From Thecamonas trahens ATCC 50062 (lineage: Eukaryota > Protista > Apusomonadida): a stretch of 64,000 nt of DNA. The notes under the pieces were generated by a model, which was not told the DNA's origin, searched no databases, and worked only from the letters and a program-made list of their open reading frames with translations. Every line of letters starts with the position of its first letter. Within the stretch, counting starts at the first letter, position 1. This document shows, in pieces, positions 54,103-60,773 of this stretch. Location: the NCBI RefSeq assembly GCF_000142905.1, contig NW_013657654.1, positions 362,136 to 426,135 of the forward strand, in the 5' to 3' direction. The translations under genes were made by a program, and so were the position numbers.

Positions 54103-55665
54103 TCACTGGGAATAGTCCATGGTAGACTCACCACGGGAGAGCGAGAGGTTTGTCTTGCGGAGGCGAGAGATTTCCTTCTTGAGGCGGATGTTGTCCATCT
54201 TGAGCTGCTGCTCGCGCTCCTTAATGGCGCACTCGCGCTCGTCGCCGAGGTCGCGCAGACCATCGAGCTCTGCCTGGAGCTCTGCGCGTTGGCGTTTGAA
54301 CGACTTTGCCTCCTGGGCAAAGGTCTTGGAGAGGATGTCGTTCTTGCGCTCCCAGCACTCGATGACGTCGTCCTTCTCGTCGAGGAGGTTGTCCTTCTCG
54401 GCGAGCTTGACCTTCATGATGTGTACGTCGCGGGCAAGGGCGTCGTACAGCTCTGCGGCAATGAGCTCCTGGCCGTCCTCGTCGACAAAGACGCCGCCGC
54501 CGGGGCGGCGTGGTGTCGCCATCATACCAGCGTGGCGCGGCGAGATGTGGGCGGTATCTGAGAGCGAGCGAGAGAGTGTGTCGAGGCGGCCGGAGAGTTG
54601 GTTGATGCGCTGGTGCTGCGACTGGATGATCTTCTCCTTACCGGCAACAGTCTCCATGACGCGCTCGAGCTCGGCCTTGAGGCCGCGGCGCTCCTCGTAC
54701 CACTCGCGGAACTTGACGCCGCCCTGCGACGATGCCATCTCCTCTGCGACGGCGTCGAGTTCGTCGTCGCGCTTGCGGAGCATGTTGTCCATGCGCTCGA
54801 GGTCCTCCTGCAGAGTGTGGATGGCACGCTCCTTGTTGCGGATGCCAGTTTCGAGCTGGCGGACATATTCTTCCGACTGGGCACGAGCCTCGAGCTCGAG
54901 CTGCAGCTTCTCGATGGCGGTGGTCTTGACACGGCAAAGGTTGTTGAGGAGCTTGTTCTCCTCGTTGAGCTCGTCAATCTTGTGCGAGAGCTCGCGGACC
55001 TTGCCGTCGAGCTGGGCCACGTCCTCGTACGACTGAGCCTGGGCACGGAGGTCGTCCTGAAGCTTGTCGATGAACGCGTCCTTCCGCTTGAGCTGCAGGT
55101 CCATGGTCTTGCGGTCCTTCCACAGCTCTTTGATCTCAGCATCCTTGGCCTTGATCTCGTTCTCCAGCCGGTCCAGCAGTTGGAAGTACGACTGATCCGG
55201 AACGTCCTTGAACGCCGCCGCCGCCGAGCCCGCTGCGCTGCCTGCGCTCCCGCGCGCCTCCTTCATCTTGGTGTTCATCTCCTCGAGCATCCGCACATCC
55301 TTGGACAGCTCCTCGTTGCGCTCGTGCGCGCGAAGGAGCTCGGTGTTCGCTTGCTCCAGCGCCGAGCTCTTGGTCACCAGCAGCTGCGACAGCGTCTCAT
55401 TCTTGTCGTGCAGCTGGTCGACCTGCTCCAGCGTCTCACGCAGCTGGCCCTGCAGCCGGACCATGGCCTCGGACGGGTCCGCCACGGCCGAGTCGAGCGC
55501 CGCCAGCCGCTTCCGCCGCCGAGCAGGGACGGCGTTCTCCAGCTGGTGGACCTCATGGTAGAGCGCTTCTAGCTGGGCACACTTTTGCAGATACAGCTCG
55601 GTCTGCGCATCCTCGTCTTGCACCTCGGCAGCCATGACAGACGCCACTGCCTCCCGCCGCGCCAT
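54103..55665 (-). CDS. MAP70-like coiled-coil protein (putative microtubule-associated)
   Basis: The blocks EENKLLNNLCRVKTTAIEKL, VKFREWYEERRGLKAEL and LYDALARDV..EKDNLLDEKDDVIE..KNDILSKTFAQEAK parallel plant MAP70 blocks in the same order. Confidence 0.75.
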   Translation of the reverse strand: MARREAVASVMAAEVQDEDAQTELYLQKCAQLEALYHEVHQLENAVPARRRKRLAALDSAVADPSEAMVRLQGQLRETLEQVDQLHDKNETLSQLLVTKSSALEQANTELLRAHERNEELSKDVRMLEEMNTKMKEARGSAGSAAGSAAAAFKDVPDQSYFQLLDRLENEIKAKDAEIKELWKDRKTMDLQLKRKDAFIDKLQDDLRAQAQSYEDVAQLDGKVRELSHKIDELNEENKLLNNLCRVKTTAIEKLQLELEARAQSEEYVRQLETGIRNKERAIHTLQEDLERMDNMLRKRDDELDAVAEEMASSQGGVKFREWYEERRGLKAELERVMETVAGKEKIIQSQHQRINQLSGRLDTLSRSLSDTAHISPRHAGMMATPRRPGGGVFVDEDGQELIAAELYDALARDVHIMKVKLAEKDNLLDEKDDVIECWERKNDILSKTFAQEAKSFKRQRAELQAELDGLRDLGDERECAIKEREQQLKMDNIRLKKEISRLRKTNLSLSRGESTMDYSQ

Positions 55666-56122
55666 CCGTCATCAGTGTGAGTCTCTCCCCGGCGACAGCG
55701 TCGCTCGCACCTCCAAAGATGGCGGCTCGGCTCCTCCGCGCGGCACCGCTGGCCACCAAAAATGTAGGCCACCAGACGCAACGCGTACACAGCCGTGGGT
55801 GCGCAGAAGGCGGCCACAGGCAGTAGAGACAGGGCTTAGGGCATGGCGCTGAGGGAGGGTGTGGGTATGAAGCATGTGTGTAAGGGAGTGGCAATGGGCA
55901 AGCCTGCTGTACGTACTCGTGTCCAAGGAGTGGTGGAGTGTGTGCGACGGGCGTTGGCCAACGGGGCTGGTGACGGTTGCTGGGCATTTGGGGCTGGCTA
56001 GTCTGCCGGCCCGAGGGGTGGTCGCTCGGCAACGGGCGGGTGGCCTGGCAACTGATGGTGGTGAGGGAGGTGTAGCGGTGGAGCGCCACTGCTCTAGGCG
56101 CCATTAGACCGGTTACACGGCT

Positions 56123-57571
56123 ATGATGGGCTTTCGGTTGACGGTGGTGGTGGCAGTGGTGGCACTGGCACTGGCTGGCTGCTTGGCGGAGGAGTCGCTG
56201 CTGGACACAGCGACGTCGCCCGAGGCAGCCGATGAGCTGCAGGAGTGGCTGGTGGCGGACGGCGGGCTACCGCTGAAGCTGCGGACGAGGTTGCAACCGA
56301 TAGAGGGCATGGGCATTGGTGTGGTTGCGAGCGAGGCGATCGGCAAGGGCGAAGCGTACTTTGCGCTTCCACACAGGCTCGCCATCTCGCGGGCTGTCAT
56401 CGACCGGTCGCCGGTAGGGACGATCGTGGCGAGGCTAGGGCAGCGACTGGAGGCGGCCAGTAGCGCGAGGGACTTGCCGCGCGGATTCACAGGCTCGGGC
56501 AGCGCTGGTTCGATCGGCAACGACGTCGCGTTTGTGGTCTGGCTGGCGGCAGCAAGGTTTGGTCCGGTCTCGCTCGGCTTTGACGAGGGCGCGGCGGTTT
56601 ACGTCGAGGCACTGCCAGAAGTGTTTGGCACGCCGCTATACTTTGACGCTGGCGAACTGGCGGCGTTGGAGGGGTGCGTGCTGGCGGGACAGGCTGCCGA
56701 TGATGCGGTACGGGTGCGCGAAATGGCGAGCTGGCTACGCAGTGCGGTGATCGAGCTCGCGCTCCCGCTCCCAGTCACAGTTTTTGCCAACGATGCGGTC
56801 AAGTGGGCTTGGTCAGTCGTGGCGTCGCGGCGAATCAACGTCGGCAACGCACCCAGCAAGGCCGGTGGTAGCGCGCACCTGCTCCCATACATCGACATGA
56901 TCAACGCCAAGGAGTCATCGGACCGGACGTTCACCTCGTACTCGGCCAAACTTGACGCGGTGGTCATGTACGCCGACGAGGATTACGCTGCCGGCGACCA
57001 AGTGTTTGAGACTTACGGCAACAAGACCAACTCGGGCTATCTCCGGTACAACGGCTTCATGTATGTCGGCAACCCGAACGACTGCGGAATGCTCGACGTT
57101 GACGTGCGGCGGTATGGCGAGAGGCTGATGGCGAGCGAGATGGATCCGTTCCGGCAGGCGCTTGGGTTCGGCTCACGGAGCGCCACGGTGTGGTCCAAAT
57201 GCGTGAGGTCAAAGCTGGCCGGCAACGACGGCATTGTCGGGCTCAGCATGCTGCTCAGTGTTCTCTCGGAAGAACTTGCGGCGGCGGTTGCGAGCCGGCT
57301 CTCGCCGTCGAGCCGGCTCGCGAGCCAGCTGACAACTGCCGAGCAGGCTGCAGGGTACCGGATGCTTGCGCAGGTGCTTGCTGACAAGCTGGCGCGGTAT
57401 CCGACGCGGGCCAAGGATGACAAAGCAGCGCTCAAAGCTAGCGGGCTGGGCGAGAACATGCGCGCTGCGATCGAGTTCCGACTGGCGGAGAAGCGGACGT
57501 TTTTGAAGCTGCGGCGTGCGGCGAAGGCACAGGCACAGAGGCTCGAGGCTGCGATGCGTGATGAACTGTAG
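56123..57571 (+). CDS. SETD3/Rubisco-LSMT-class SET-domain protein with signal peptide and C-terminal RDEL
   Basis: Motifs GMGIGVVASEAI.KGE, WAWSVVASR, LLPYIDMIN, GDQVFETYG.K.N...RYNGF, and an LSMT substrate-binding tail (LARYPT..DD...AIEFRLAEK). Confidence 0.85.
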   Translation: MMGFRLTVVVAVVALALAGCLAEESLLDTATSPEAADELQEWLVADGGLPLKLRTRLQPIEGMGIGVVASEAIGKGEAYFALPHRLAISRAVIDRSPVGTIVARLGQRLEAASSARDLPRGFTGSGSAGSIGNDVAFVVWLAAARFGPVSLGFDEGAAVYVEALPEVFGTPLYFDAGELAALEGCVLAGQAADDAVRVREMASWLRSAVIELALPLPVTVFANDAVKWAWSVVASRRINVGNAPSKAGGSAHLLPYIDMINAKESSDRTFTSYSAKLDAVVMYADEDYAAGDQVFETYGNKTNSGYLRYNGFMYVGNPNDCGMLDVDVRRYGERLMASEMDPFRQALGFGSRSATVWSKCVRSKLAGNDGIVGLSMLLSVLSEELAAAVASRLSPSSRLASQLTTAEQAAGYRMLAQVLADKLARYPTRAKDDKAALKASGLGENMRAAIEFRLAEKRTFLKLRRAAKAQAQRLEAAMRDEL

Positions 57572-58145
57572 CGTGTGGTAGAGTGATTGCTCTAGTGTTG
57601 ACTTGTGTGGCGTGAGATGGACCGAGCGGCCGTGGCTGGAGAGCCAAGTGAGCTCGCCGACATCCACCAGCCCGTCGAGGCACCGATACTCAGAGACCGA
57701 CCCTCAGCGCCGAGTGCGTCACGCTCGACCATTACCCGCGACCGCCGGGTCTCGAGCCACCTTGTCCAGCCCGCGATGCTCCGTAGCCCCAACGTGAGTC
57801 GGACATGCCGCGCTCGTGCGGCAATTGTTGCCCGACCAGGCGGTGGCACGCGTGCTGACAGGACTAGGAGGAGGGAGAAAGAAAAAAAAAACGCGCCATT
57901 GTTCGCGCACTTTCGCGTAGAATCTTTCGTCTGCATCAGTTTTTCGCATCGAATCATTGGAGTCCCTAACAGCAAAGTGTGCAAGGAGGGGGAGGAGGAG
58001 GAGGACGGCGGTACGGAGGCGGGGCAAGCGAAGAGGGTAGGAGCGAGACACCCCTGTCTTGAACACGGCCGACTGTCAAGCGCTTCCCTTTGTACGTGGG
58101 AGTGGGCGGCAGCAGGTACAACAACACCGCACGTGGTTAAGGAGT

Positions 58146-60773
58146 ATGTCGCAGGCTTTGTACCCGAGCAGGGAGGAGGAGCGTGGCGGAGGCGGCGGTA
58201 GCCGCAGCGAGACGGTGGTGACGACGCGACCTCGGTCGGGGGCGGTGCTGCAGCGGAACGGGCGGGCGGTGGTGGACTCTGCTGGCCGCAAGGCAGTCCG
58301 TGAGCTGCGGCACAAACCATACTCGCTGGCGACGGGGACAGGGCGTGCGCTTGCCGACGTGGAGCCCAATGTGCTTGCCGGCCCGGGTGGCACACGTGTG
58401 GCGCGGCGGTCTTCGGAGGCTGGGAGGGTTAATTCGCTGCCGCCCGGCCCGCTACCGTCGGCAGGGCTCTCTATCAAGGAACGGCGGGTGAGGACAGGTG
58501 TGTCGTCGTTGTCAACGTCGTACACAGCGTCGTCGGTCTCGTCGTTGGTGACGTCGGCCGGCTCGGCGCCGCGGATGCAGATTTTTGACGAGGGGGCTCA
58601 GGAGCCGTCGCCGACGCGTATGCGTCCGGTGGCCGGGACGATCCGCGCTGCGGACGGGACAGTCTCGCTGGTACACCGGACAACGGGCGAGCGTGTGGCG
58701 ACGTCAGCGTCGCCGCGGCGGTCGCTCTCGTCACGAAGGGCGGCGGAAGTGCGGCGGGAGTCGCGGGCGTCGTCGACGCGTTCGCGCGGCTCCAGCTCGC
58801 GGGCGTCGCGGCTGGCGCGGTCGGGCTCGTCGTCGTCGTCGATAGGCACGTCGCCGCTGATGCCGTCGCCCAACGATGAGCTGCAGCGGCTGCGGGCACA
58901 GGTCCAGCACGAAGCTGGTGAGTTGGATCCCGAGGTGCAGGGCGTGCTGGCGTTGGCGCGGACGAGGGCGCTGTCGCACGTTATCGCACGGCCGCGGCCA
59001 CGGCTCCGGCGGTCGCACTCGATGGCAGCACCGTTTAACGTGCACGCCAACGGTGTGCGTGACTCGCCGTCGAAACTCATGCGCAGCCTCTCGCTCTACT
59101 CGCCGCACTCGCAGCATAAGCGGCGCGATCTCCCGACGCCAGACCTCGATGTTGGAGCGATGGAGCTCTCTGTCGATGTTGGCAACTCACAGGGCGGGGC
59201 CGGAGGAGGCCGGACGGTCACGCCTTGGCGGGCCGAATACCTCGATGGCCCGCTCCCGACGACGCGCAACATGGTCCGCGAGTGCTCGGGCGTGTCTGCG
59301 GACCTTGTGGCGCAGCTACTTGTGGAGACGCAGCAGGCGCCAGCGAGCCGCGAGCTTAACTTTCTCATCATCGACTGCCGGTATCCGTACGAGTACCAAC
59401 ACGGACACATTGCGAGTGCGGTCAACTTGTGGACGCGGTCGTCGCTCATCGATGCACTGATCCAGTCGCCGTTGCCGGCCAACTTTCGGCTCATTTTCCA
59501 CTGCGAGTTCTCGACACAGCGCGGGCCAGACCTGTGCTCGATGCTGAGGCTGGCGGACCGGCACGTAGGGATGGAGAAGTATGGAGTGGCGTTTGATGAG
59601 AGCCATCTTCACTATCCCAACTGCTACGTGCTCCGCGGCGGATACAAAGAGTTCTTTGGTGCGTACCCGGAGCTCTGCACACCGAGCGCGTACATGACGA
59701 TGGACGATGAGCGGTACAAGTATCAGCTCGCGGCGTGCCGGCGCCACCGGTCCTCGTCAATTCGCGAGCGGTCGCGGTCGTGCTCGGACCTGGCAGCAGT
59801 ACTCGCCGGCGAGCCGACACTGTTCGCGCCGGCGGCGAGCCAGCCGCCGCCTCTCTCCAGGAACAAGCTCGCGACGCCGGGGCGATGGAACCACGCCCCG
59901 CGGTGGGAGCGGGAGAACGCCATGCCCGAGTTTGCGTCAATTCTGGCGCAAGCTCTCCCGGACGTGACTGAGGAGAACGCAAGCGTGCACCCGCTCATTC
60001 GGCGGGCGCGTATGGAGCTTGCACATGCGCTGGCTACCACGCCTCTGGCGTCGCGTGCCGCGTCTGCAGCGCTGTTTGCGCCGGAGCGTGCACTGGCGTC
60101 GCGGGCATCCAACGCAGCGTCGATCTCGGACTCGGACGACGACTGCTCGACGGTCTGGGTGGACTCTCAGCAACGGGCCGGCTGTGGGCTGAGCGGGTAT
60201 GTGTCGTTTGACGACGACGACGAAGACGACGACGACGTGTGCCCCGAGAACAGTGTGGAAACAGCAGATCACCTCGTGTTACCGCCTGGGACCGGATCGC
60301 CGCGTGCCGTGCCTCGACCGATTTCATCGCGGCGTGCCCTGGTGCGGCACCTCTCGCTATCTGCCATCACTGAGGATGACAGGGATTTTGAGAGCCCAAG
60401 CGGGTTGTGCGCATCGCCGGCATCAGGCGTGTTCAGTTCAGGGTCCCAGACGACGATCTCGCTCAGGGGAGCAGCAGAGCGTCCGTACAAGTTGGGCAGG
60501 CGGTCGCGACAGTTGTTGCAAGCAAGTGTGGCTGGATGCGAGTCGGACATCGACTCGGATGATGAGGACTCGTCGTCGTCGTCGTCGTCAGGCCCGATCA
60601 TTTTCGCAGGGACAGCGGTGTCGACCTCGAACGGGATTGTGACGTCGGCCTCGCTTTCAACACTACTGGGTGAGTCGAGCGCACCGTCATCGCCGATGGT
60701 CATGGCGCCTGAGCCCCGGCTAGCGTCGTCGGATGAGGCACCGCTGTTTGTTATGGACGAGAGTGACGAATAA
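58146..60773 (+). CDS. CDC25: M-phase inducer phosphatase Cdc25
   Basis: Motifs IIDCRYPYEYQHGHI, IFHCEFSTQRGP, LHYPNCYVLRGGYKEFF, C.PSAYMTMD. Long disordered flanks carry RxxS and SP sites. Confidence 0.93.
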   Translation: MSQALYPSREEERGGGGGSRSETVVTTRPRSGAVLQRNGRAVVDSAGRKAVRELRHKPYSLATGTGRALADVEPNVLAGPGGTRVARRSSEAGRVNSLPPGPLPSAGLSIKERRVRTGVSSLSTSYTASSVSSLVTSAGSAPRMQIFDEGAQEPSPTRMRPVAGTIRAADGTVSLVHRTTGERVATSASPRRSLSSRRAAEVRRESRASSTRSRGSSSRASRLARSGSSSSSIGTSPLMPSPNDELQRLRAQVQHEAGELDPEVQGVLALARTRALSHVIARPRPRLRRSHSMAAPFNVHANGVRDSPSKLMRSLSLYSPHSQHKRRDLPTPDLDVGAMELSVDVGNSQGGAGGGRTVTPWRAEYLDGPLPTTRNMVRECSGVSADLVAQLLVETQQAPASRELNFLIIDCRYPYEYQHGHIASAVNLWTRSSLIDALIQSPLPANFRLIFHCEFSTQRGPDLCSMLRLADRHVGMEKYGVAFDESHLHYPNCYVLRGGYKEFFGAYPELCTPSAYMTMDDERYKYQLAACRRHRSSSIRERSRSCSDLAAVLAGEPTLFAPAASQPPPLSRNKLATPGRWNHAPRWERENAMPEFASILAQALPDVTEENASVHPLIRRARMELAHALATTPLASRAASAALFAPERALASRASNAASISDSDDDCSTVWVDSQQRAGCGLSGYVSFDDDDEDDDDVCPENSVETADHLVLPPGTGSPRAVPRPISSRRALVRHLSLSAITEDDRDFESPSGLCASPASGVFSSGSQTTISLRGAAERPYKLGRRSRQLLQASVAGCESDIDSDDEDSSSSSSSGPIIFAGTAVSTSNGIVTSASLSTLLGESSAPSSPMVMAPEPRLASSDEAPLFVMDESDE

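What the first reader, a model, noticed from the sequence alone, without database searches (positions are those of the whole stretch)
56123..57571. SET-domain methyltransferase addressed to the ER lumen (signal peptide plus RDEL)
Seen: a classical N-terminal signal peptide (MMGFRLTVVVAVVALALAGCLA-EE), a full SETD3/LSMT-type SET and substrate-binding domain, and C-terminal -RDEL*. Known: RDEL is a KDEL-receptor retrieval signal, and characterised SET enzymes act in cytosol, nucleus or plastid. Inference: this is either a lumenal protein Lys/His methylation system, which would need SAM import, or a SET fold repurposed as an ER chaperone or binder. Two SAM-site positions deviate: the usual NH is NA and YGF is NGF.
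Basis: partly seen in the sequence, partly recalled or inferred. Interest (0 to 1): 0.8.

Follow-up and report, generated by a model that had tools for sequence, protein, structure and literature searches.

The report
ER-targeted SET-domain methyltransferase, conserved in protists
A protist gene encodes a SETD3/LSMT-type protein methyltransferase with a signal peptide and an ER-retention tail, and dozens of relatives in other protist lineages share that layout, pointing to an undescribed methylation system inside the secretory pathway.

Summary
ORF 56123-57571 (+) is Thecamonas trahens AMSG_06270. It has a signal-peptide-like N-terminus, a full SETD3/LSMT-type fold (AlphaFold pLDDT 87.5; TM about 0.7 to SETD3, LSMT and SETD6) and a C-terminal RDEL.

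The ER reading is well supported in silico:
- In the same genome GRP170 and an FKBP isomerase end in RDEL. BiP, UGGT and PDIs end in HDEL, HEDL or HEEL. An ERD2 receptor gene is present.
- All five LSMT-like SET genes of Thecamonas have hydrophobic N-termini, and two others end in KDDL and KTDL.
- 31 of the 150 best relatives end in -x[DENQTG]EL, and 21 of those have signal-like N-termini. Named sources include Bodo, Rhodelphis and cryptists.
- This clade carries a co-occurring cysteine pair that the cytosolic relatives lack.

The SAM-contact residues are kept (E61, R236, N261, Y298, F312). The "NH to NA" change hits a residue that contacts SAM through its main chain. "NGF" also occurs in true SETD3 orthologues.

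Most likely this is an active ER-lumenal protein methyltransferase, with two MFS_5 (Golgi SAM transporter family) genes as candidate SAM importers. It is not a SETD3 orthologue.

No paper describing such a family was found. Localisation and activity are untested. First readers of this scan flagged two paralogues elsewhere in this genome.

The parts
55894..55908 (+). 5' coding mini-exon (MGKPA) of the deposited gene model AMSG_06270
   Evidence: Joining 55894-55908 to 56108-57568 reproduces P0001 exactly (492 aa).
55909..56107 (+). Intron of the deposited model (GTACGT...CATTAG)
   Evidence: Canonical GT/AG ends read in the window. The in-frame TAG at 56105-56107 lies within the acceptor.
56108..57571 (+). 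Main coding exon with stop codon. The uninterrupted ORF from the second ATG is 56123-57571.
56123..56188 (+). Signal-peptide-like segment M1-A22 (MMGFRLTVVVAVVALALAGCLA), with predicted cleavage before EES
   Evidence: It contains the highest hydropathy of the protein and has small residues at -3 and -1. It resembles the N-termini of GRP94, FKBP and P4H-like ER proteins of this genome. No SignalP was run.
56228..57067 (+). Split SET domain with inserted iSET helices (about residues 36-315)
   Evidence: Pfam SET covers residues 64-299. The AlphaFold model and Foldseek matches to SETD3, LSMT and SETD6 agree.
56903..56908 (+). N261-A262, the position of the canonical 'NH' motif (SETD3 N278-H279)
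   Evidence: HMMER alignment to SETD3. Asn is present in 77 of 80 aligned relatives. At position 262 the counts are H 42, C 27, Y 4, A 3, S 2.
57014..57016 (+). Y298, equivalent to the catalytic Tyr313 of SETD3
   Evidence: Tyr in 78 of 80. Its role in SETD3 is described in PMC6400499.
57083..57085 (+). C321, first member of the clade-specific cysteine pair
   Evidence: Co-occurs with C360: 32 sequences have both, 40 have neither, 8 have one. It lies just before strand 322-327 of the model.
57200..57202 (+). C360, second member of the cysteine pair
   Evidence: It lies in strand 356-361 of the model.
57083..57532 (+). C-terminal Rubisco-LSMT-type substrate-binding lobe (about residues 321-470)
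   Evidence: Pfam PF09273 covers residues 384-458 and is above its cut-off. The fold matches run over the full length.
57557..57571 (+). C-terminal RDEL followed by TAG
   Evidence: The same tetrapeptide ends GRP170 and an FKBP isomerase in this genome.

Best explanation
AMSG_06270 is a soluble resident of the ER lumen (early secretory pathway) of Thecamonas trahens, and is probably an active SAM-dependent protein methyltransferase.

Proposed mechanism, all inferred:
- It is made with a cleavable signal peptide and translocated.
- It probably forms a C321-C360 disulfide.
- It is returned from the Golgi by the ERD2 receptor through its C-terminal RDEL.
- It uses its SETD3/LSMT/SETD6-type SET domain and C-terminal substrate-binding lobe to methylate lumenal or secretory client proteins. 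Lysine is more likely than histidine as the target.
- SAM would enter through an MFS_5-type transporter.

Shown here: the sequence features, the fold, retention of the cofactor-contact and catalytic residues, the local use of RDEL/HDEL by ER residents, and conservation of the layout in a broad protist clade.
For: (1) Signal-like N-terminus and RDEL are present in both possible gene models.

(2) The local retrieval code was read from the genome. BiP ends HDEL, GRP170 RDEL, UGGT HDEL, GRP94 HEDL, one PDI HEDL and a PDI-like protein HEEL. ERD2 is present.

(3) A genome-wide pattern scan found 16 HDEL-stop and 8 RDEL-stop sites. The RDEL sites that close long frames include GRP170 and an FKBP isomerase with a signal peptide.

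(4) All five LSMT-like SET genes of the genome have hydrophobic N-termini. Two others end in KDDL and KTDL.

(5) 31 of the 150 best relatives end in -x[DENQTG]EL, and 21 of these have signal-like N-termini. None of these 31 is one of the SETD3 orthologues recognisable by an MGKK/MGRK-type N-terminus. Further bodonid-type homologues end in KDEL, RDEL, SDEL, TDEL, NDEL, KEEL, REEL and similar.

(6) The careful ML tree places the query in a 24-row clade of 'NC-type' modules with support 95/92. Fourteen of those rows are from proteins ending in xEL.

(7) The cysteine pair C321/C360 co-occurs (32 both, 40 neither, 8 one; Fisher p = 6e-14). It tracks signal/xEL proteins, 25 of 32 against 6 of 48.

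(8) Cofactor and catalytic residues are kept: E61, R236, N261, Y298, F312 and D258. In SETD3, His279 and Ser325 contact AdoHcy by main chain only (PMC6400499).

(9) There are two MFS_5 loci in the genome. That family contains the plant Golgi SAM transporters GoSAMT1-3 and C. elegans SAMT1 (bioRxiv 10.1101/2021.07.06.451061).
Against: - No localisation, transcript or enzymatic data exist.
- The signal peptide was judged by hydropathy and the -3/-1 rule only.
- The His of the NH motif is Ala. The family-wide Ser of the 'SFW' motif is Glu (E155). The Pfam SET score is just under its cut-off.
- The pocket residue is Phe in LSMT and SETD6 (cation-pi contact with lysine) and Asn in SETD3. Here it is Ile, so the target residue is unclear.
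- The closest subfamily member with a complete sequence (Palpitomonas P0018/P0154) has a signal peptide but no xDEL.
- The AU test did not reject placing the query with the cytosolic NH-type clade (p = 0.09).
- Two RDEL-ending frames in this genome (an LRR protein and a 162-aa unknown) may be chance.
- MFS_5 transporters are documented for the Golgi, not the ER.
- METTL9 shows that a putative signal peptide on a methyltransferase need not determine localisation (PMC8571522).
Confidence: 0.5

Rival explanations
1. It is ER-lumenal but catalytically dead. The SET/LSMT fold would be kept as a substrate-binding or chaperone-like module, that is, a pseudoenzyme.
For: H279-equivalent is Ala and S155-equivalent is Glu. 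The Pfam SET score is under its cut-off. Two Thecamonas paralogues (L002 ending KDDL, and L031) have lost both the motif Asn and the catalytic Tyr, so pseudoenzymes do occur in this family. The query sits on a long branch (1.74).
Against: Every residue that contacts AdoHcy through a side chain in SETD3 and that is shared with LSMT (E104, R254, N278, F327), plus the catalytic Tyr, is retained. The substituted His contacts the cofactor only by main chain. The whole secretory clade replaces it with an invariant Cys while keeping the other residues.
Confidence: 0.2
2. It enters the secretory pathway but is not an ER resident. It would be secreted or act in the Golgi, lysosome or cell surface, with RDEL weak or masked, or it would stay membrane-anchored by an uncleaved signal anchor.
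For: Several homologues have a signal peptide without xDEL. Paralogue L003 has a polybasic tail instead. The oomycete homologue P0159 has an N-terminal anchor-like segment. The hydrophobic stretch here is 17 residues. The C-terminal tail is predicted helical up to RDEL.
Against: RDEL is exactly the tetrapeptide on GRP170 and an ER-type FKBP in this genome. The small residues at -3 and -1, followed by acidic residues, favour cleavage. The xDEL tail recurs across dozens of homologues whose preceding tails are unrelated.
Confidence: 0.12
3. It is not secretory at all. The protein would be cytosolic or organellar, the hydrophobic N-terminus would be a gene-model artefact or another kind of targeting sequence, and RDEL would be chance.
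For: There are no transcript data. Chance RDEL endings exist in the genome. METTL9 is a precedent for a putative signal peptide that is dispensable for localisation. The AU test does not exclude kinship with cytosolic SET proteins.
Against: The first two ATGs of the long exon directly precede the hydrophobic segment, and the deposited model keeps it. The chance of [KRH]DEL at a given C-terminus is about 3e-5. The joint signal plus xDEL layout and the clade-specific Cys pair recur in many lineages.
Confidence: 0.08

Closest known systems
Human SETD3 (actin His73 N-methyltransferase; PDB 6mbj, 6icv, 3smt)
   Same: Best sequence and fold match (E = 1.8e-13; TM 0.67-0.73 over about 455-472 alignment columns). 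The architecture is the same: split SET, iSET and a C-terminal LSMT-like lobe. R254, N278, Y313, F327 and E104 have equivalents.
   Different: SETD3 is cytosolic, with no signal peptide or xDEL. Its His-specific determinants N256 and W274 are Ile and Ile here. H279 is Ala. SETD3 lacks the Cys pair. The query lies outside the SETD3 clade in the tree, so it is not an orthologue.
Pea Rubisco LSMT (PDB 1mlv, 1ozv, 2h2j) and human SETD6 (3qxy)
   Same: Same fold class (TM 0.64-0.76). Pfam Rubis-subs-bind domain. They methylate lysines of non-histone proteins, which is the most likely chemistry here.
   Different: They act in the plastid stroma or the cytosol and nucleus. The Phe that gives a cation-pi contact to the lysine (PMC6400499) is Ile here. 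They keep NH.
The uncharacterised 'NC-type' secretory SET/LSMT clade of protists (for example Bodo saltans 'membrane-associated protein' P0123, Rhodelphis marinus P0062, Guillardia theta GUITHDRAFT_141487)
   Same: Signal-like N-terminus. The tail is xDEL/xEEL in P0123 (SDEL) and P0062 (HDEL) and in many unnamed clade members, but not in the probably truncated Guillardia model. The His of NH is replaced (mostly by Cys). Conserved Cys pair. The query falls in this clade with 95/92 support.
   Different: The query is a long-branch member with Ala rather than Cys after the motif Asn. Many members are tandem two-module proteins of 800-1000 aa. None has been studied experimentally, as far as the searched literature shows.
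METTL9 (7-beta-strand histidine methyltransferase with a putative signal peptide, localised to the ER)
   Same: A protein methyltransferase associated with the ER that carries an N-terminal signal-like sequence (PMC8571522).
   Different: Unrelated fold. It has no KDEL-type tail. Its signal peptide is dispensable for localisation and its topology is unresolved.
Golgi-lumenal polysaccharide and glycan methylation supplied by MFS_5 SAM transporters (GoSAMT1-3, C. elegans SAMT1)
   Same: A precedent that SAM-dependent methylation occurs inside the secretory pathway and needs SAM import. Thecamonas has two MFS_5 loci.
   Different: Those substrates are cell-wall polysaccharides and glycans rather than proteins, and they are methylated in the Golgi. 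From memory, the methyltransferases involved are not SET-fold enzymes; this was not checked.

Membership tests
SET-domain methyltransferases of the LSMT/SETD3/SETD6 class | SET fold with inserted iSET and a C-terminal Rubisco-LSMT substrate-binding lobe | tested here: met
   AlphaFold model with pLDDT 87.5. Foldseek matches SETD3, LSMT and SETD6 at TM 0.64-0.76 over the full length. PF09273 scores 31.1 bits against a 21.6 cut-off.
SET-domain methyltransferases of the LSMT/SETD3/SETD6 class | Pfam SET (PF00856) above its gathering score | tested here: not met
   20.0 bits against a 22.4 cut-off, with the envelope at residues 64-299. This is marginal. From memory, the split SET domain of this class often scores low.
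SET-domain methyltransferases of the LSMT/SETD3/SETD6 class | Side-chain SAM contacts and the catalytic Tyr (SETD3 E104, R254, N278, F327, Y313) | tested here: met
   E61, R236, N261, F312 and Y298. Their roles are taken from PMC6400499.
SET-domain methyltransferases of the LSMT/SETD3/SETD6 class | Canonical NH dipeptide | tested here: not met
   It is N261-A262. In SETD3 the His contacts adenine N6 and N7 by main chain only. The secretory clade has Cys here.
SET-domain methyltransferases of the LSMT/SETD3/SETD6 class | SAM binding and methyl transfer | not testable with these tools
   This needs a biochemical assay.
SETD3 orthologues (actin His73 methyltransferase) | His-pocket residues N256 and W274, and membership of the SETD3 clade | tested here: not met
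   I238 and I257 occupy those positions. The query groups with the NC-type clade and not with the MGKK-type SETD3 sequences. The AU test gave p = 0.09 for a union with the whole NH-type clade.
Soluble ER residents retrieved by the KDEL receptor | Cleavable N-terminal signal peptide | tested here: inconclusive
   Hydropathy and the -3/-1 rule fit, and the segment resembles the signal peptides of local ER proteins. No dedicated predictor or experiment was available.
Soluble ER residents retrieved by the KDEL receptor | C-terminal [KRH]DEL-type tetrapeptide at the true C-terminus | tested here: met
   RDEL is followed by TAG and is retained in the deposited model.
Soluble ER residents retrieved by the KDEL receptor | The receptor is present and the same signal is used by bona fide ER residents in the organism | tested here: met
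   ERD2 (PF00810) at 1.7e-51. GRP170 and an FKBP end in RDEL. BiP, UGGT and PDIs end in HDEL.
Soluble ER residents retrieved by the KDEL receptor | Demonstrated ER-lumenal localisation | not testable with these tools
   This needs tagging and protease protection.

The most novel reading that the evidence does not exclude
Many protist lineages (apusomonads, kinetoplastids, cryptists, Rhodelphis, stramenopiles) share an ancient protein-methylation system inside the ER and secretory pathway that is missing from the usual model organisms. It would consist of SET/LSMT-type writers with signal peptides and xDEL tails, active and pseudoenzyme paralogues, SAM supply through MFS_5 transporters, and possibly a lumenal JmjC-type oxygenase as a counterpart. 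Thecamonas has a JmjC_2 protein ending in RDEL.
Probability: 0.3. Interest if true: 0.85.

Novelty: new variant of a known kind. Interest (0 to 1): 0.7.

Why it matters
All characterised SET-domain enzymes act in the cytosol, nucleus or plastid. I know of no SET-type protein methyltransferase that acts inside the ER lumen, and the literature searches found no report of one.

If this conserved clade is active, three things follow:
- Secretory and ER-resident proteins of many protists carry an unexplored methyl-lysine (or other) modification.
- SAM must reach the ER lumen.
- The SET/LSMT family had a secretory branch early in eukaryote evolution that animals, fungi and plants may lack. That absence was not tested here.

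The work also gives a concrete set of genes on which lumenal protein methylation can be tested: this one, its four Thecamonas paralogues, and the Bodo saltans and Guillardia homologues.

Tried and rejected
- The word-indexed homologue search with the query alone returned only the protein itself. The exhaustive HMMER search was needed.
- Searching with the Bodo saltans member found only bodonid and environmental relatives and no named trypanosomatid orthologue. No TrypTag or RNAi data could therefore be brought in.
- Five literature searches for ER-lumenal or KDEL-bearing SET proteins, and one for the locus tag, found nothing relevant. The library lacks most subscription journals.
- The ESM Atlas structure library was not available. 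The feature search only showed SET/LSMT clusters, with Euglenozoa the commonest taxon.
- The FastTree of 204 modules left the query unresolved. The mixture-model tree resolved it, but the AU test against placement with the cytosolic clade gave p = 0.09, which is not a rejection.
- Model coordinates are not exposed, so the C321-C360 distance could not be measured.
- Rejected: SETD3 orthology, because the pocket residues and the tree disagree.
- Rejected: plastid-type bipartite targeting. The SET domain starts about 15 residues after the predicted cleavage site, which leaves little room for a transit peptide. From memory, Thecamonas has no plastid.
- Rejected: 'NGF' as a sign of lost SAM binding.
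- The genome-wide pattern count as a whole (41 sites) is no higher than the reversed-pattern control (44). Only the stop-terminated HDEL class is clearly enriched.
Full report
**What is there.** Window 56123-57571 (+) is one uninterrupted 482-codon ORF. It starts MMGFRLTVVVAVVALALAGCLA-EES and ends -AAMRDEL, followed by TAG. It is 100% identical to the NCBI protein AMSG_06270 of Thecamonas trahens ATCC 50062, an apusomonad. The window is contig 26 of that genome. The deposited 492-aa model adds a five-codon 5' exon (55894-55908) and a 199-nt GT..AG intron. I reproduced that model exactly from the window. Both possible N-termini keep the hydrophobic segment, and both models end in RDEL.

**Fold and family.**
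- Pfam finds the Rubisco-LSMT substrate-binding domain above its cut-off, and the SET domain just below its cut-off.
- HMMER against PDB sequences finds SETD3 at E = 1.8e-13 over residues 159-469.
- An AlphaFold2 model built on 80 homologues is confident (pLDDT 87.5, pTM 0.87).
- Foldseek aligns the model over about 455-472 columns to SETD3 (TM 0.67-0.73), pea LSMT (0.64-0.73) and SETD6 (0.66/0.76).

The protein is therefore a complete member of the LSMT/SETD3/SETD6 structural class.

**Is the ER address credible in this organism?** I read the C-termini of classical ER residents straight from the genome.
- The BiP-like HSP70 ends in HDEL and the GRP170/HYOU1-like HSP70 ends in RDEL.
- UGGT ends in HDEL, a PDI in HEDL and a PDI-like protein in HEEL.
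- The GRP94-like HSP90 has a signal peptide and ends in HEDL.
- An ERD2/KDEL-receptor gene is present.

A genome-wide scan for (His/Arg/Gln)-Asp-Glu-Leu-stop found 16 HDEL, 8 RDEL and 3 QDEL sites. When TGG stands in place of the stop, the counts are 3, 10 and 1, so HDEL-stop is clearly enriched and RDEL-stop is mixed. Six of the eight RDEL sites close long frames (the other two close frames of 23 and 39 codons): GRP170, an FKBP-type isomerase with a signal peptide, a JmjC_2 protein with a hydrophobic N-terminus, this SET protein, an LRR protein and a 162-aa unknown. RDEL is thus a signal that recognised ER residents use here, although not every occurrence need be functional. A composition-based estimate gives about 3e-5 for [KRH]DEL at any one C-terminus.

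**It is not a one-off.** Thecamonas has five LSMT-like SET genes, and all five open frames begin with a signal-like hydrophobic segment.
- L002 ends in KDDL.
- L004 ends in KTDL.
- L003 ends in a polybasic tail.
- L031 ends in QLLL.
- L002 and L031 have lost both the motif Asn and the catalytic Tyr, so they look like pseudoenzymes.

First readers of this scan had independently flagged the KDDL paralogue and the polybasic-tail paralogue.

The exhaustive HMMER search found 950 relatives. Of the best 150, 31 end in -x[DENQTG]EL, and 21 of those have a signal-like N-termini by a crude hydropathy rule. Only two of the 31 have any NH-type module, each in a two-module protein, and none is a recognisable SETD3 orthologue. 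A further set of bodonid-type homologues ends in KDEL, RDEL, SDEL, TDEL, NDEL, KEEL, REEL, HDDL and similar, after otherwise unrelated tails.

Named sources of these homologues are:
- Bodo saltans and a prokinetoplastid;
- Rhodelphis marinus;
- Guillardia, Proteomonas and Palpitomonas;
- Aphanomyces;
- Mallomonas.

Most other members come from environmental assemblies. Many are tandem two-module proteins of 800-1000 aa.

**Phylogeny.** A FastTree of 204 modules left the query unresolved. A careful IQ-TREE mixture-model tree of 51 modules placed it in a 24-row clade with support 95/92. That clade consists of modules in which the His of the NH motif is replaced, mostly by Cys. Fourteen of its rows come from xEL-ending proteins and four more from proteins with a signal peptide only. 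The nearest branches are the cryptist sequences, which share the ETYGNK[ST]N and YNGF motifs. The query branch is long. An AU test did not reject forcing it together with the cytosolic NH-type clade (p = 0.09). Clade membership is therefore favoured but not proven.

**A compartment signature independent of the termini.** Two cysteines, C321 (NDC) and C360 (KCV), are invariant (C321) or nearly invariant (C360) in the alignment of secretory-clade members. Across 80 single-module homologues they co-occur: 32 have both, 40 have neither and 8 have one. They track the signal/xEL proteins, 25 of 32 against 6 of 48 (the counts are not phylogenetically independent). They are absent from the cytosolic sequences inspected, including the SETD3 orthologues. 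In the model one lies just before strand 322-327 and the other lies in strand 356-361. A disulfide, as expected in an oxidising lumen, is a reasonable inference. I could not measure the distance.

**Active or dead?** I mapped the SETD3 residues described in PMC6400499 through the HMMER and MAFFT alignments.

| SETD3 residue | Role in SETD3 | Query |
|---|---|---|
| E104 | stacks on adenine | E61 |
| R254 | binds the AdoHcy carboxylate | R236 |
| N278 | binds ribose and amine; N278A cripples kcat | N261 |
| F327 | pi-stacks on adenine | F312 |
| Y313 | catalytic Tyr | Y298 |
| D275 | main-chain carbonyl bonds N3 of His73 | D258 |
| H279 | binds adenine N6/N7 by main chain only | A262 |
| S325 | binds ribose by main-chain carbonyl only | N310 |

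The first six rows are all retained. Asn at the second of them also occurs in genuine SETD3 orthologues. Neither change argues against SAM binding.

There are real departures. E155 replaces a Ser that is present in 73 of 80 relatives. The pocket residue is Ile: it is Phe in LSMT and SETD6 (cation-pi contact with lysine) and Asn in SETD3 (histidine), and Ile is also the secretory-clade consensus. W274 of SETD3 is likewise Ile here. The protein is therefore not a SETD3 orthologue, and its target residue is open. I consider lysine more likely than histidine.

**SAM supply.** The genome has two MFS_5 loci. This family includes the Arabidopsis Golgi SAM transporters GoSAMT1-3 and the proposed C. 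elegans Golgi transporter SAMT1 (bioRxiv 10.1101/2021.07.06.451061). They are candidates only. Their localisation and substrate in Thecamonas are unknown.

**Comparison with the known, and novelty.** The closest characterised proteins (SETD3, LSMT, SETD6) act in the cytosol, nucleus or plastid stroma. METTL9 is an ER-associated methyltransferase with a putative signal peptide. It has an unrelated fold, and its signal peptide is dispensable for localisation (PMC8571522), which is a caution for this case. Six full-text searches found no description of a SET-domain protein with a KDEL-type signal or a lumenal location. I therefore class this as a new variant of a known kind: a familiar enzyme fold in a compartment where it has not been described, and conserved as a clade across several eukaryotic supergroups.

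**Verdict.**
- Observation: confirmed.
- ER-lumenal residence: likely, about 0.7-0.75 on my estimate.
- Catalytic competence given that location: more likely than not.
- Combined best explanation: about 0.5.
- Main rivals: a lumenal pseudoenzyme, a post-ER or anchored secretory protein, and a non-secretory protein with chance signals.

Noticed in passing
L049 / L067:2976-4505 (G000:C15, stop near 413807): A JmjC_2 (PF08007) protein with a long hydrophobic N-terminal segment ends in SRDEL. It may be an ER-lumenal JmjC-type oxygenase in the same genome and could be a counterpart of the lumenal SET proteins. From memory, human JMJD8 is an ER-lumenal JmjC protein.
   Followed up: partly
L002 (G000:C67:109417-110451, -) and L031 (G000:C10:172039-172335, +): Two SET/LSMT paralogues have signal-like N-termini and have lost both the motif Asn and the catalytic Tyr, so they are probably pseudoenzymes. 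L002 ends in KDDL.
   Followed up: partly
L020 (GRP94-like), L026 (PDI), L028 (PDI-like): Thecamonas ER residents use the unusual tails HEDL (GRP94 and PDI) and HEEL beside HDEL and RDEL. The local retrieval code therefore seems to accept Asp at the -2 position, which makes the KDDL and KTDL tails of the SET paralogues plausible signals.
   Followed up: partly
L053 (G000:C29, HDEL stop at 313512-313526, -): A 2OG-Fe(II) oxygenase (PF13640, prolyl-4-hydroxylase-like) has a signal peptide and HDEL. Several HDEL-ending proteins with signal peptides and no Pfam match (L037, L038, L063) are candidate novel ER residents.
   Followed up: no
L022 (G000:C1:284527-285435) and L023/L024 (G000:C56:17177-18255): Two MFS_5 (GoSAMT/SAMT-1/MFSD5 family) transporter genes are candidate SAM importers of the secretory pathway.
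   Followed up: partly
P0002-P0013 and other 800-1000 aa hits: Many relatives are tandem fusions of two different SET/LSMT modules: an N-terminal 'EDYGDN' type and a C-terminal 'NC...ENYGQ-PNH' type. The two module types form separate clades in the tree, which suggests an old duplication and fusion.
   Followed up: partly
window 54103-55665 (-) and 58059-60773 (+): The flanking genes are a MAP70-like ORF on the minus strand and a long ORF that first readers noted as Cdc25. They show no evident functional link to the SET gene.
   Followed up: no
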